IMG/VR virus record: IMGVR_UViG_3300042907_001080
Span: 217,659-281,658 of that record
Direction: 5' to 3' (one strand)
Length of the DNA stretch: 64,000 nt
The notes beneath the pieces are model-generated. The model searched no databases. It was not told where the DNA came from and saw only the letters and a program-made list of their open reading frames with translations. Shown piece by piece: positions 49,115-52,141 of the stretch. The position numbers were made by a program, and so were the translations under genes. How positions within the stretch are numbered: position 1 is the stretch's first letter; each line of letters opens with the position of its first letter.

Positions 49115-49342
49115 TTATTCTACTTTTTTAAGATATTCTCGACCTATCTTGCCTTCTTGGACATCTAATAGAGCACTCACCGGAGAGTTGATTTGAGTAG
49201 TCAGCCCTGCTGTTTTGTGTCTACGAGACAATTCTCTGGCTCTTACTGTAGCGATTAGCACAAGATCAAATCTGTTGCCTCCCGCTTGTTCTACACATTG
49301 TTGTGTATCTACGGTAGGTCCACGACTATCAGATAATTTCAT
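49115..49342 (-). CDS. rpoZ: RNA polymerase omega subunit-like protein
   Basis: GNRFDLVLIATVRAREL...PVSALLDVQEGKI. Confidence 0.8.
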   Translation of the reverse strand: MKLSDSRGPTVDTQQCVEQAGGNRFDLVLIATVRARELSRRHKTAGLTTQINSPVSALLDVQEGKIGREYLKKVE

Positions 49343-49781: not shown

Positions 49782-50357
49782 TTAGATCAAGCCTTCTGCC
49801 TGTAGTGTTGCTACTACATCGTCTGCCAGAGGAATCTCTGTGCGGATGTTCAACTCAAGCACTTCATCGTTGAGCTGTTGTTTTTGCTTCTTTAGGTTAA
49901 GCACTTCTGCTTTGGCCTGTGCAATTTGTTCTTTGCTGAGAACGCTGGTGCTCACAGTATCACTATAGCCGTAAAGACTGCGACGAGTGTTTTCGCCCTT
50001 GTCGTTCTTGATCTTTTCCAGCTTGCCTTTAATCACTTCCAAAGAAGTAATCTCTGTGGCTTTAGCCAGTTCTTCTAGCTGACCGATGCGCTTGTCAATG
50101 AACGCTGCCTTGGCTAATGCTGTGTTAATACCACTGGCTGCGTTGGCTGTTCCAATCAATGCACGGATGTTGTACATAGCCATGGTTAACTTTTGTCTGC
50201 GACCATCGTTGGTAACCAATTCAGAATTGGCCTTGGTGATAGCAGCTTCTACGTCTTGAAACTCATTGAGTTCAATAGTGAAATCTACTTTGATACTTTT
50301 GATGGTATCATTGATGCTGTTCTGCACAGCATTTGCTTTTCTCAGTGTGATATTCAT
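49782..50357 (-). CDS. Coiled-coil hypothetical protein
   Basis: MNITLRKAN..; heptad-rich; AAGGA SD. Confidence 0.8.
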   Translation of the reverse strand: MNITLRKANAVQNSINDTIKSIKVDFTIELNEFQDVEAAITKANSELVTNDGRRQKLTMAMYNIRALIGTANAASGINTALAKAAFIDKRIGQLEELAKATEITSLEVIKGKLEKIKNDKGENTRRSLYGYSDTVSTSVLSKEQIAQAKAEVLNLKKQKQQLNDEVLELNIRTEIPLADDVVATLQAEGLI

Positions 50358-50648
50358 TTTTCTTCCTTTTTCAAACAACAATGACGGGTCCATGAAAGGT
50401 CAAGTAATAGACCGGACAATAGACAATGAAGATTTGTATTCTTCGTTGACAATGTGCAATATACAATACACAGAGGTCTATATATTTCCGATTAACAAAT
50501 GACATTCTATTAGGAATCGGATCACATAAACACGTTCCAATTTCAAGTTGGATTGTAAGTTTGGAGTAAGCATGAAGCTCACGCCTTTGTGTCTATTCTC
50601 GTCTACCCTTCACTTCACCGGTTGAAACATTTCTGTTCCAACAAAACT

Positions 50649-50677
50649 ATTATAACATTCTTTTAAGTGTGTGTCAA
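50649..50677 (-). promoter_or_regulatory. sigma70 consensus promoter followed by ~280-nt leader
   Basis: TTGACA-N17-TATAAT. Confidence 0.85.
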
Positions 50678-50684
50678 CATGTTT

Positions 50685-50758
50685 TGGTGCCCCTTGACAG
50701 AATCGAACTGCCAATTGATGATTACAAATCAACTGTTATACCATTTAACTAAAAGGGC
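50685..50758 (-). tRNA. tRNA-Thr(TGT)
   Basis: Loop TTTGTAA; ACCA. Confidence 0.9.
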
Positions 50759-50774
50759 CTACTACTACTTATCT

Positions 50775-50849
50775 TGGTGGAGGATGGGAGGATCGAACTC
50801 CCGACTGAAGCTTGCAAAGCTACCGTGTTCCCAGCTATACCAATCCCCC
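50775..50849 (-). tRNA. tRNA-Ala(TGC)
   Basis: G3:U70 pair; loop TTTGCAA; ACCA. Confidence 0.9.
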
Positions 50850-50851
50850 GA

Positions 50852-51067
50852 TTAATCCCTAGTTGATGCTGTGCCAGTGGGATTCTTAGTGTATCCACCT
50901 GGACCAGCAGGTCTCTTTTCTCTCTTGGGCTGAACAGCTGCACATAGCTCAGCATCGATCATTGCACGTTTCCATGCACCTCGCTTGTGCGGATCTAAAA
51001 CTCCACTCAGTGCTAGACTTGCTTTAGTCATTGAACTCATTCTATAATTTGGACCTGGTTTCATCAT
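50852..51067 (-). CDS. Small basic hypothetical protein
   Basis: 71 aa, AAAGGA SD, lies between RNA genes. Confidence 0.65.
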   Translation of the reverse strand: MMKPGPNYRMSSMTKASLALSGVLDPHKRGAWKRAMIDAELCAAVQPKREKRPAGPGGYTKNPTGTASTRD

Positions 51068-51085
51068 TTTTCCTTTTTTAAAATC

Positions 51086-51285
51086 TGGTTGCTCTGCATC
51101 CCCCGGCGGTAATTATATCGCATCAGGCACCGGGAACCCCCAATACCATCACACACGACCTCCACCCGCTCCCCGACAGGGACCGTTCTCGCATTGCTAG
51201 CGGCCTTTCGGTTCGAAGACTACCACCCGTAGCTGTCACGCTACTTCTCATCGTGTGGGTCACACTATCCGGAGACACCCGGAAC
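51086..51285 (-). ncRNA. ~200-nt GC-rich structured RNA ending in ACCA
   Basis: 5' GTGTCTCCGG pairs with 3' CCGGGGGATGC; internal CACACGAT/GTCGTGTG, GTAGC/GCTAC and TCCC/GGGA stems; 3' end AACCA. Confidence 0.6.
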
Positions 51286-51289
51286 GTTC

Positions 51290-51377
51290 TGGCGGAGCAT
51301 GTAGGAATCGAACCTACTCACCCATTGCTGAATGACAGATTAGCAATCTGTTGCCTTAACCGGTCGGCCAATGCTCC
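51290..51377 (-). tRNA. tRNA-Ser(GCT)
   Basis: Long variable arm; loop TTGCTAA; GCCA. Confidence 0.92.
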
Positions 51378-51385
51378 GTATTACT

Positions 51386-51461
51386 TGGTGGGTCGTGACA
51401 GTCTCGAACTGCCGACATTCTGCGTGTAAGGCAGACGCTCTACCAACTGAGCTAACGACCC
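51386..51461 (-). tRNA. tRNA-Val(TAC)
   Basis: Loop CTTACAC; ACCA. Confidence 0.95.
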
Positions 51462-51465
51462 TGAC

Positions 51466-51630
51466 CATTAAAAAATAACATTACACCTTATAGGATGAGA
51501 CAAATTTCTGAGTGGAGTTCGATTCTCCTCATAAGCCATTGTCCACGGTTATGTCAGAGGAGTAAGATGGCCCTATTCCTCATGAGATTGTGCGTCCACA
51601 AACGATACCCGCTAATGCTATTTTTTAATG
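51466..51630. ncRNA. Structured element closed by an 18-bp AU-rich inverted repeat
   Basis: CATTAAAAAATAACATTA ... TAATGCTATTTTTTAATG; internal GGAG-TTCGATT-CTCC T-loop hairpin on + strand. Confidence 0.5.
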
Positions 51631-51711
51631 GTGCCCTAGGACGGACTCGAACCGTCACGCTTGCGCACTGGCTTCTAAGACCAGCGTGTCTACCAATTCC
51701 ACCACCAGGGC
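51629..51711 (-). tRNA. tRNA-Leu(TAG)
   Basis: Loop CTTAGAA; variable arm; ACCA. Confidence 0.93.
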
Positions 51712-51766: not shown

Positions 51767-51795
51767 ATTGTAACATCGTTGTTGCATACTGTCAA
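51767..51795 (-). promoter_or_regulatory. Internal sigma70 promoter in tRNA array
   Basis: TTGACA-N17-TACAAT. Confidence 0.75.
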
Positions 51796-52049: not shown

Positions 52050-52141
52050 TGGTGCCTCCGCCGGGAGTCGAACCCAGATGAACCAATTATCTGTTGCTTA
52101 CGGGATATAAATCCGCCGTTTTACCATTAAACTACAGAGGC
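52050..52141 (-). tRNA. tRNA-Ile(TAT) with abnormally long variable region
   Basis: GCGGA-TTTATAT-CCCGT arm followed by a ~22-nt extra segment; normal acceptor, D and T arms; 92 nt. Confidence 0.7.

What the first reader, a model, noticed from the sequence alone, without database searches (positions are those of the whole stretch)
51086..51285. ~200-nt GC-rich RNA with a CCA end inside the tRNA operon
Seen: it begins right after tRNA-Ser, has paired 5'/3' ends, multiple internal helices and a terminal ACCA like its tRNA neighbours, but no T-loop or anticodon arm and no tmRNA, RNase P or SRP signature that I can recognise. Inference: a novel ncRNA processed by the tRNA maturation machinery.
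Basis: partly seen in the sequence, partly recalled or inferred. Interest (0 to 1): 0.62.

Follow-up and report, generated by a model that had tools for sequence, protein, structure and literature searches.

The report
New folded RNA in phage tRNA arrays
The ~200-base GC-rich stretch after tRNA-Ser is a real, intricately folded non-coding RNA from a family found in the tRNA gene clusters of many freshwater, often jumbo, phages; it matches no catalogued RNA family, and its "CCA end" is a local accident rather than a family feature.

Summary
The feature is real. It lies on the minus strand at window 51090-51289, directly after tRNA-Ser(GCU). The window is the end of a 281.7-kb IMG/VR phage record. 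Two pattern scans of viral contigs found at least 115 distinct full-length copies, many on 200-525 kb contigs. All copies are co-oriented with neighbouring tRNAs. About 60% start 0-4 nt after a tRNA's CCA, and 44% are followed within 2-10 nt by another tRNA. Covariation is strong: 99.1% of cells are paired and 28 of 43 pairs show compensatory changes. It supports six hairpins, two long-range helices, a kissing loop and a loop-strand pseudoknot. No Rfam 15 family matches, even at E<=10. A model built from the family finds no copy in T4, PA5oct or Ochrobactrum phage OC. Contigs from lake metatranscriptomes pile up on the conserved core. The terminal ACCA occurs in only 5 of 116 contexts. In most relatives that carry the neighbouring small ORF the element is absent from this site, so here it is a lineage-specific gain. 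Best reading: a stable structured RNA co-transcribed with the tRNAs and cut out by tRNA-processing nucleases. Its nearest analogues by position are T4 RNA C/D and GOLLD/ROOL. Its biochemical role is unknown; a ribozyme role is not excluded.

The parts
51090..51289 (-). The structured RNA element (200 nt; RNA position p = 51290 minus window coordinate). The conserved core runs from C4 to A200; nt 1-3 (GAA) are a poorly conserved spacer.
   Evidence: nhmmer and CM boundaries (220.6 bits, E 5.7e-69); alignments A2 and A3; covariation.
51268..51283 (-). P2 hairpin (RNA 7-22). Its loop G14-U15-C16 kisses the P4 loop.
   Evidence: All 5 pairs show compensatory changes. Loop-loop covariation GUC/GAC, AUC/GAU and AACG/CGUU.
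51253..51265 (-). P3 hairpin (RNA 25-37) with the near-invariant loop GACCC.
   Evidence: 3 of 5 pairs are compensatory (CG:54 / GC:40 and others). The loop change to GGUCCC co-occurs with GGGUGGU changing to GGGCGGU.
51244..51252 (-). J3/4, conserved unpaired GAUGAGAAG.
   Evidence: Largely invariant columns in A2 and A3.
51230..51243 (-). P4 hairpin (RNA 47-60). Its loop G53-A54-C55 is the kissing partner of the P2 loop.
   Evidence: 3 of 4 pairs are compensatory; kissing-loop covariation.
51221..51229 (-). J4/5, CGGGUGGUA. It is the strand partner of the ACC motif in the P5 loop (pseudoknot) and possibly of the ACCC in the P3 loop.
   Evidence: U65 to C co-occurs with A78 to G (AACC to AGCC) in the 2 of 3 such sequences whose P5 loop was recovered, and with the P3-loop change in all 3. 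The register is ambiguous.
51203..51220 (-). P5 hairpin (RNA 70-87) with a conserved AACC in its loop. Some relatives carry a 30-45 nt insertion just before it.
   Evidence: 4 of 5 pairs are compensatory; insertions seen in L059, L111, L146 and others.
51190..51202 (-). P6, a 3-bp stem with a 7-nt loop URGCAAU (RNA 88-100). U97 covaries with A104.
   Evidence: C90-G98 is CG:80 / UA:18. U97/A104 is UA:90 / CG:8.
51178..51183 (-). P7 5' strand, GUCCCU (RNA 107-112).
   Evidence: Pairs with RNA 187-192. 5 of 6 pairs are compensatory. The whole helix is replaced by CCUCUCUG/CAGAGAGG in L146 and by CCUUUUUG/CAGAAAGG in L144.
51098..51109 (-). 3' strands of P8 (RNA 181-184), of the 2-bp C115-G116 / C185-G186 step, and of P7 (RNA 187-192).
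   Evidence: In P8, C122-G183 becomes U-A in L144 and L146.
51166..51169 (-). P8 5' strand, GCGG (RNA 121-124).
51117..51159 (-). P9, a variable-length hairpin (RNA 131-173). The stem base covaries; the distal part differs in sequence and length between lineages.
   Evidence: 5 of 6 pairs are compensatory; family lengths run 172-279 nt.
51090..51097 (-). Unpaired 3' tail GCAGAGCA, invariant in 96 of 98 aligned copies; the two most divergent copies end AAGCA.
51086..51089 (-). It lies outside the conserved element and is specific to this lineage.
   Evidence: 5 of 116 contexts continue ACCAGA; alignment.
51290..51377 (-). tRNA-Ser(gct), with encoded CCA directly abutting the element.
   Evidence: ARAGORN; Rfam tRNA, 56.6 bits.
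51767..51795 (-). Sigma-70-like promoter (TTGACA-17-TACAAT, preceded by TG). It could drive tRNA-Leu(tag), tRNA-Val, tRNA-Ser, the element, the small ORF, tRNA-Ala and tRNA-Thr.
   Evidence: Consensus scan, 11 of 12 matches. No promoter-like or terminator-like site on the minus strand between it and 50685. This is a consensus match only.
50852..51067 (-). Small ORF P0001 (71 aa), 22 nt downstream of the element. It is a neighbour and not part of the family unit.
   Evidence: 35 related loci. In most of them the ORF follows tRNA-Ser(gct) directly, without the element.

Best explanation
The window carries one copy of an uncatalogued family of ~200-nt, compactly folded non-coding RNAs that live in the tRNA gene arrays of freshwater phages, many of them jumbo. 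It is transcribed as part of the polycistronic tRNA precursor. It is freed by the same host nucleases that mature the tRNAs: a cut in the short spacer after the preceding tRNA's CCA and, in relatives, the RNase P cut at the 5' end of the next tRNA followed by 3' trimming. It then accumulates as a stable RNA. Its fold has six hairpins, two long-range helices, a kissing loop and a pseudoknot, with roughly 75 invariant and mostly unpaired nucleotides. This marks it as an RNA that works through its three-dimensional shape in trans, most likely by binding a conserved host or phage component of tRNA or translation metabolism. That is also what is presumed for T4 RNA C/D, GOLLD and ROOL. It is not a tRNA-like acceptor. 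Shown here: the family, the fold, the genomic niche, the absence from Rfam, and presence in RNA libraries. Inferred: co-transcription, the processing route, stability, and trans action. Unknown: the molecular target.
For: Together these give 168 full-length copies, 115 of them unique, 172-279 nt long. 98 representatives score 93-242 bits with model R1. Fold: 28 of 43 pairs are compensatory, 99.1% of cells are paired against 35-50% for slid partners, and 0 of 500 shuffles reach the observed values. The MAFFT-based RNAalifold result agrees, with 21 of 43 pairs compensatory. Tertiary pairs are supported. Niche: 373 of 373 tRNAs within 400 nt are on the same strand; 68 of 114 contexts have a tRNA ending -1 to +4 nt upstream; 49 of 111 have a tRNA starting 2-10 nt downstream. 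Transcription unit in the window. Not a known family. RNA presence: 23 freshwater or lake runs on record as RNA, among 24 runs from 16 studies, each hold 9-14% of the sampled words of a 2-kb stretch, about the size of the element. Contig depth over 51140-51275 is 4538 and 2132 in X4, against 140 or less in the adjacent bins and 265 or less elsewhere in that run. Precedents in the same niche: T4 rnaD lies 1 nt after tRNA-Arg and rnaC 6 nt after rnaD, and both are of unknown function (PMC9697503). GOLLD and ROOL are often near phage tRNA islands (PMC12286853). A GOLLD lies ~650 nt from the element in L086.
Against: No ends, strand or discrete size of the RNA were observed, because only assembled contigs could be laid. 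The depth over the core sums contigs from many related phages, and DNA carry-over cannot be excluded. One of the four runs laid showed no coverage of the element. About 40% of copies are not directly preceded by a tRNA, and no promoter was found upstream of one such copy, so transcription and processing may differ between contexts. In the window the 3' side is an mRNA (P0001) rather than a tRNA, so RNase P cannot define the 3' end here. No partner or activity is known. 'Binds a translation or tRNA component' rests only on analogy and location.
Confidence: 0.62

Rival explanations
1. It is a self-cleaving ribozyme, or otherwise a tRNA-processing ribozyme. It would cut at or near its own 5' end and so release the mature 3' end of the preceding tRNA without host nucleases. 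This would be functionally like the HDV-like theta ribozymes of gut phages, but a different and much larger fold.
For: 46 of 114 contexts start exactly at the base after an encoded CCA, and 68 of 114 within -1 to +4 nt. Theta ribozymes set a precedent for ribozymes next to phage tRNAs (PMC10879173). The RNA has many invariant unpaired nucleotides and a complex tertiary fold. UGGU and UGGA motifs are complementary to NCCA (direct reading of the sequence; inference only).
Against: The first three nucleotides, next to the would-be cleavage site, are poorly conserved (GAA, AAA, UUA, AGC, CCC and others). About 40% of copies do not follow a tRNA yet are equally conserved. No known self-cleaving class matches. 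Only 4.5% of theta-associated tRNAs encode CCA, whereas these tRNAs do; cleavage would leave CCA with a 2',3'-cyclic phosphate that needs repair (established ribozyme chemistry). At 200 nt it is larger than all but glmS and VS.
Confidence: 0.13
2. It is a cis-acting 5' leader (riboswitch or translational operator) of the small ORF P0001, which starts 22 nt downstream.
For: In the window and in two related lineages the element lies directly upstream of the ORF's Shine-Dalgarno sequence.
Against: Most P0001 homologues (22 of the 35 loci) have no element. The ORF then follows tRNA-Ser(gct) after about 20 nt in most of them. Only 5 of 116 contexts of the element have this downstream sequence, and 49 of 111 are followed by a tRNA.
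Confidence: 0.02
3. The conservation acts on DNA rather than RNA, for example a mobile insertion, a recombination site, or a promoter (the invariant TATAAT).
For: Presence or absence is polymorphic at the same site among relatives. The element occurs after 11 different tRNA species. A TAYAAT hexamer is conserved.
Against: The compensatory changes preserve G-U as well as Watson-Crick pairs on one strand only (for example UG:74, UG:62 and GU:97). This is a signature of selection on RNA. There are no terminal repeats, no target duplication in general and no associated transposase or endonuclease. No -35 element lies at the right spacing (direct reading of the sequence).
Confidence: 0.03
4. It is a highly diverged member of a known RNA family that covariance models miss: tmRNA, RNase P RNA, a group I intron, a Y RNA, or a GOLLD/ROOL domain.
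For: The size and location would fit tmRNA or RNase P. One weak hit to permuted tmRNA overlaps a copy (22.7 bits, E 0.49).
Against: No consistent sub-threshold hit appears across 9 copies searched at E<=5-10. The 5' and 3' ends do not pair, and there is no T arm. A bona fide tmRNA and a GOLLD co-occur with the element in the same arrays.
Confidence: 0.03
5. It is protein-coding (the 51-codon GTG ORF at 51123-51278, minus strand).
For: An ORF is listed there. The GC-rich sequence has few stop codons.
Against: Unique family lengths fall in all three classes modulo 3 (55, 38 and 22), with indels in hairpin loops. Substitutions are pairwise compensatory. There is no ribosome-binding site and no Pfam-type signal.
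Confidence: 0.01

Closest known systems
Bacteriophage T4 small stable RNAs: rnaD (species 2, 119 nt) and rnaC (species 1, 139 nt)
   Same: They lie in the phage tRNA cluster on the tRNA strand. rnaD starts 1 nt after tRNA-Arg, and rnaC starts 6 nt after rnaD. Their function is still unknown (PMC9697503). The position and the presumed biogenesis from a tRNA precursor are the same as proposed here.
   Different: No sequence or structure homology: model R1 finds nothing in the T4 record. rnaC has a tRNA-type T arm and rnaD ends in CACCA. The present family has neither, is longer, and has long-range helices and a kissing loop.
GOLLD and ROOL RNAs (large ornate phage and prophage RNAs)
   Same: They are phage-encoded, often next to tRNA islands, have complex folds with pseudoknots, are abundant and are of unknown function (PMC12286853). 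A GOLLD lies in the same array as one family member (L086).
   Different: They are 2-4 times larger and have unrelated sequences and structures; there is no Rfam hit on the element. Whether the present RNA forms multimers has not been tested.
Theta (minimal HDV-like) ribozymes next to phage tRNAs
   Same: Structured RNAs placed right after phage tRNA genes and proposed to act in tRNA 3'-end formation (PMC10879173).
   Different: Theta ribozymes are small HDV-like double pseudoknots from gut phages, and only 4.5% of their tRNAs encode CCA. Here the RNA is 200 nt, is not HDV-like by Rfam, comes from freshwater phages, follows tRNAs that encode CCA, and in about 40% of copies does not follow a tRNA.
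tmRNA and RNase P RNA (other non-tRNA genes found in or near tRNA arrays)
   Same: Size class and genomic neighbourhood; some huge phages carry tmRNA (L104).
   Different: There is no acceptor-type pairing of the 5' and 3' ends, no T arm, no tag reading frame, no conserved P4-type signature, and no covariance-model match.

Membership tests
Any Rfam 15 family (4227 models) | Covariance-model score at or above the family's gathering threshold | tested here: not met
   Window scan at gathering score found only 27 tRNAs. Window 50600-51700 at E<=10 gave nothing on the element apart from an 11.8-bit chance hit. Eight loci with diverse copies at E<=5 gave no consistent hit.
tRNA or tRNA-like acceptor RNA | Paired 5'/3' acceptor stem, T arm with a GTTCRANYC-type loop, and a conserved 3' NCCA | tested here: not met
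   ARAGORN and the Rfam tRNA model do not call it. The ends do not pair. ACCA follows the element in only 5 of 116 contexts.
tmRNA (standard or permuted) | tRNA-like domain plus a tag-peptide reading frame; match to the ARAGORN or Rfam tmRNA models | tested here: not met
   ARAGORN finds no tmRNA. The only hit is a 22.7-bit, E 0.49 partial match in one copy. A true tmRNA scores 98.5 bits elsewhere in L104.
RNase P RNA | P1 pairing of the ends, the P4 pseudoknot with conserved CR-I and CR-V sequences, and a match to an Rfam RNase P model | tested here: not met
   No RNase P model hit at E<=10. The helix topology from covariation differs. The comparison with CR-I and CR-V was made from memory only.
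T4 rnaC / rnaD | Sequence and structure homology to the T4 species 1 and 2 RNAs | tested here: not met
   R1 search of the T4 locus with filters off gave a best score of 4.4 bits, and not on rnaC or rnaD. The whole T4 record gave no match. The position next to a tRNA is shared.
HDV-like / theta self-cleaving ribozymes | Nested double-pseudoknot fold (P1, P1.1, P2, P3, P4) and self-cleavage at the 5' end | tested here: inconclusive
   Fold: no Rfam HDV-type hit, and the covariation-supported helices do not form that topology. Cleavage activity cannot be tested with these tools.
GOLLD RNA | Match to RF02032 | tested here: not met
   The element is not hit. A GOLLD at 201.8 bits lies ~650 nt away in L086 and is seen partially in L110.
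Structured ncRNA in general (the claim actually made) | Homologues whose substitutions preserve base pairs more than controls do | tested here: met
   covariation score 0.455 against 0.156 for shuffles and 0.02-0.08 for slid partners; 571 cells with changes on both sides against 138. The independent MAFFT alignment agrees.

The most novel reading that the evidence does not exclude
The family is a new class of natural ribozyme carried by jumbo phages. It could be a cis-acting 3'-tRNase that recognises the CCA of the upstream tRNA through its UGG motifs and cuts at the junction. Or it could be a trans-acting catalyst working on tRNAs or the translation apparatus. Its size, tertiary contacts and roughly 75 invariant, mostly unpaired nucleotides are in the range of known large ribozymes.
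Probability: 0.13. Interest if true: 0.92.

Novelty: new variant of a known kind. Interest (0 to 1): 0.62.

Why it matters
Phage tRNA arrays are known to shelter a few enigmatic structured RNAs: T4 RNA C/D since the 1970s, then GOLLD and ROOL. None has an established function. This family is a further, mid-sized class in that niche. Its structure is exceptionally well supported by covariation, including tertiary contacts. It is found in phage contigs from dozens of freshwater metagenomes, many of them 200-525 kb, and it shows a strong signal in lake metatranscriptome assemblies. At 200 nt it is small enough for in vitro cleavage assays, chemical probing, crystallography or cryo-EM, and pull-downs. 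That makes the open question of what non-tRNA RNAs in phage tRNA clusters do more tractable. It is also missing from Rfam, so current annotation pipelines leave it blank.

Tried and rejected
- blastn ('distant' mode) of the 551-nt region against 50,697 GenBank phage records found no match.
- Model R1 run on the whole records of T4, PA5oct and Ochrobactrum phage OC found nothing. PA5oct and OC share a 32-34% identical protein with the window.
- An exact 18-mer scan of 185,579 prokaryote genomes gave 8 hits in MAGs. R1 scores them at 12 bits or less and Rfam shows no shared RNA. I estimate about 17 such matches by chance in 596 Gb, so I treat them as chance.
- Single-sequence thermodynamic folding is not informative on either strand (z = -0.59 and -0.02).
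- One viral scan was partly wasted. My gap range N{20,50} excluded the usual 19-nt spacing, so it returned only the insertion-bearing variants.
- Supplementary tables of the 10,006-candidate viral RNA catalogue (PMC10690425) are not held. I therefore could not check whether this motif is among its unnamed candidates.
- Literature searches for a described RNA of this kind found none.
- I considered a target-site duplication (CCA ... element ... ACCA) as a sign of transposition. I rejected it as a family feature, because other contexts show no duplication.
- I considered a hammerhead-like core (GAUGAG). I rejected it because there is no GAAA or stem III equivalent and no Rfam hit.
- No promoter was found upstream of a copy that does not follow a tRNA.
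- The reads tool allowed one call and returned only contigs, so RNA ends, strand and abundance could not be established.

Full report
**Where and what**

The window is the last 64 kb of a 281,658-bp IMG/VR virus record. ARAGORN and Rfam find 27 tRNA genes, all on the minus strand, between 48.3 and 54.6 kb. tRNA-Ser(gct) occupies 51290-51377 and ends in an encoded CCA.

The next base on the minus strand, 51289, starts a 200-nt stretch (GAACGUUCCGGG ... GGGGGAUGCAGAGCA, ending at 51090). Its GC content is 0.60, in a region that is otherwise mostly 0.35-0.47. After it come ACCA, an AU-rich spacer with a Shine-Dalgarno sequence, and a 71-codon ORF (P0001, 50852-51067). tRNA-Ala and tRNA-Thr follow.

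A protein in the window is 33% identical to proteins of PA5oct-like jumbo phages and 32% identical to one of Ochrobactrum phage OC. Weaker matches come from other phages of Proteobacteria. The carrier is therefore a distant relative of those myoviruses.

**Is it more than chance?**

From this one sequence, no. The minimum-free-energy fold is no better than that of dinucleotide shuffles (z = -0.59). Homologues settle the question.

- An internal 18-mer occurs in 96 IMG/VR stretches.
- An HMM and a covariance model (R1) recover 168 full-length copies. 115 of them are unique, 172-279 nt long.
- 98 representatives score 93-242 bits. The window's copy scores 220.6 bits.
- Many carriers are contigs of 200-525 kb, drawn from dozens of metagenome data sets.

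On the model-guided alignment, 99.1% of cells are standard pairs, against 35-50% when the 3' partners are slid by 1-3 columns. 28 of 43 pairs show changes on both sides, and no shuffle out of 500 reaches any observed measure. The independent MAFFT/RNAalifold analysis of 60 sequences gives the same helices, with 21 of 43 pairs compensatory.

**The fold (RNA numbering; window coordinate = 51290 minus position)**

- *Hairpins:* P2 (7-22), P3 (25-37, loop GACCC), P4 (47-60), P5 (70-87), P6 (88-100, loop URGCAAU) and the variable P9 (131-173).
- *Long-range helices:* P7 (107-112 with 187-192) and P8 (121-124 with 181-184). In the two most divergent members the whole P7 helix is swapped for CCUCUCUG/CAGAGAGG or CCUUUUUG/CAGAAAGG. 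In the same two members the P8 pair C122-G183 becomes U-A.
- *Kissing loop:* the P2 and P4 loops co-vary as GUC/GAC, AUC/GAU and AACG/CGUU.
- *Pseudoknot:* the ACC of the P5 loop, and possibly the ACCC of the P3 loop, pairs with the GGGUGGU strand between P4 and P5. The change U65 to C comes with GACCC to GGUCCC in three sequences. In the two of them whose P5 loop was recovered, it also comes with AACC to AGCC. The register is ambiguous.
- *Tertiary pair:* U97 co-varies with A104 (UA:90, CG:8).
- *Weak helix:* a short helix C4-U6 with A104-G106 is only weakly supported and fails in some lineages.
- *Invariant, apparently unpaired segments:* about 75 columns are invariant among 60 distinct sequences, although that set was selected with the exact 18-mer. 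These include GAUGAGAAG, CGGGUGGU, GAGAAC, GUGGA, UAYAAUUA and the 3' tail GCAGAGCA.

The 5' and 3' ends do not pair with each other.

The terminal ACCA lies outside the conserved element. Only 5 of 116 distinct contexts continue with ACCAGA; the others continue with UAUUGA, UUUUAU and similar. The resemblance to a tRNA 3' end is a peculiarity of this lineage.

The first three nucleotides (GAA here) are also poorly conserved. They look like an ordinary inter-gene spacer.

**Genomic niche**

All 373 tRNA genes within 400 nt of family members are on the element's strand. In 68 of 114 contexts a tRNA ends -1 to +4 nt upstream, exactly 0 nt in 46 of them. The upstream tRNA is Tyr in 23, Ser-gct in 14 and Asn in 10, with eight other species making up the rest. 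In 49 of 111 contexts a tRNA starts 2-10 nt downstream. The element therefore behaves like one more gene unit of the array.

It is also gained and lost. Of 35 loci holding a homologue of the small ORF P0001, only three lineages (13 loci) have the element. In most of the others the ORF follows tRNA-Ser(gct) after about 20 nt.

In the window, a near-consensus sigma-70-type promoter at 51795-51767 precedes tRNA-Leu(tag). No promoter-like or terminator-like site on the minus strand separates it from tRNA-Val, tRNA-Ser, the element, P0001, tRNA-Ala and tRNA-Thr. This is a consensus scan only, but it fits co-transcription.

**Expression**

24 runs from 16 studies, 23 of them on record as freshwater or lake metatranscriptome (RNA) runs, each hold 9-14% of the sampled 31-mers of a 2,031-nt stretch. 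That share is about the size of the element.

Four runs were laid on the stretch. Contigs pile on 51140-51275, the conserved core. Summed depth there is 4538 and 2132 in X4, 168-209 in X7 and 20-50 in X1, and there is none in X6. Neighbouring coding sequence in X4 is at 140 or less. The loose ends of these contigs carry the variable hairpins of other family members, so the signal belongs to the family rather than to this phage.

Because these are assembled contigs, they show presence in RNA libraries but not ends, strand or level. Pooling over many phages and DNA carry-over both remain caveats.

**Comparison with what is known**

- Rfam 15 gives nothing on the window copy at E<=10, and nothing consistent on eight loci with diverse copies at E<=5.
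- GenBank phages give no blastn match.
- R1 finds no copy in T4, PA5oct or phage OC.
- The eight exact 18-mer hits in prokaryote MAGs are not homologues and are about what chance predicts.
- The closest analogues by position are T4 rnaD and rnaC. rnaD starts 1 nt after tRNA-Arg and rnaC 6 nt after rnaD. Both are still of unknown function, and they differ in sequence and fold from this family.
- GOLLD and ROOL share the niche. A GOLLD at 201.8 bits lies ~650 nt from the element in L086, and a tmRNA lies 3.5 kb from it in L104. The element is therefore neither of these.
- Theta ribozymes are a precedent for catalytic RNAs placed right after phage tRNAs. They are small HDV-like folds, and only 4.5% of their tRNAs encode CCA.

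**What it most likely does**

I commit to the following, with confidence about 0.6. It is a stable, trans-acting, shape-dependent RNA. It is made from the tRNA polycistron and excised by the host's tRNA-processing nucleases. It acts on some conserved component of tRNA or translation metabolism during infection. The family, the fold, the niche and the RNA presence are shown; the biogenesis and the mode of action are inferred.

The main rival, at about 0.13, is a ribozyme that forms the upstream tRNA's 3' end or acts on tRNAs. In its favour are the zero-nucleotide spacing to CCA in 40% of contexts, the many invariant unpaired nucleotides, and the UGG motifs complementary to CCA. Against it are the poor conservation of the nucleotides at the junction and the 40% of copies with no upstream tRNA.

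The remaining readings are each contradicted by tests above. These are a leader of P0001, a DNA-level element, a diverged known family, and a coding region.

**Novelty and verdict**

The interpretation "novel ncRNA in the tRNA operon" holds. "CCA end / tRNA-like maturation of the 3' end" does not hold as a family trait.

I found no description of this family in Rfam or in the searchable literature. It may sit unnamed in a 10,006-candidate catalogue whose tables I could not read.

It is a new class within a known kind: enigmatic structured RNAs of phage tRNA arrays. Interest is 0.62.

Noticed in passing
window 50394-50684 (minus strand): A perfect sigma-70-type promoter (TTGACA-17-TATAAT, preceded by TG, at 50677-50649) sits right after tRNA-Thr(tgt). 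A ~250-nt untranslated stretch follows before ORF 49782-50393. A 500-nt contig from RNA-library run X1 covers 50251-50658 at depth 424. This may be a long leader or a separate small RNA.
   Followed up: no
window 52050-52141 (minus strand): The tRNA with anticodon UAU (called Ile) is 92 nt long and has a ~24-nt extra arm containing a 5-bp hairpin. That class-II-like shape is unusual for tRNA-Ile. It is conserved in related contigs (L008, L015, L024, L026, L034).
   Followed up: partly
L086:314-778 (minus strand) and L110:930-1050: A GOLLD RNA (RF02032, 201.8 bits), with a tRNA embedded in it, lies ~650 nt downstream of that contig's copy of the element. The same tRNA arrays therefore host two unrelated ornate RNAs.
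   Followed up: partly
L104:10047-10346: A phage-encoded tmRNA (permuted / beta-type models, 98.5 and 89.1 bits) lies 3.5 kb upstream of that contig's copy of the element, on a 197-kb viral contig.
   Followed up: no
window 50852-51067 (minus strand): P0001 is a 71-aa basic ORF embedded in the tRNA array. It is conserved in 35 IMG/VR loci, mostly between tRNA-Ser(gct) and tRNA-Ala(tgc). It has no Pfam or PHROG match.
   Followed up: partly
window 51480-51550 (plus strand): A T-arm-like GGAGTTCGATTCTCC followed by ...CATAAGCCA lies on the strand opposite to all the tRNA genes, in the 167-nt gap between tRNA-Leu(tag) and tRNA-Val. ARAGORN and Rfam do not call it. It may be a tRNA remnant.
   Followed up: no
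window 49115-49342 (minus strand): A 75-aa ORF inside the tRNA region gives a borderline match to RNA polymerase Rpb6/omega (PF01192, 26.3 bits against a cut-off of 26).
   Followed up: no
L132:5467-5650 (minus strand): In several relatives a ~60-aa ORF on the opposite strand fills the 199 nt between tRNA-Ser(gct) and the element. The complement of the element's P2 hairpin plus a T-run looks like that ORF's terminator.
   Followed up: no
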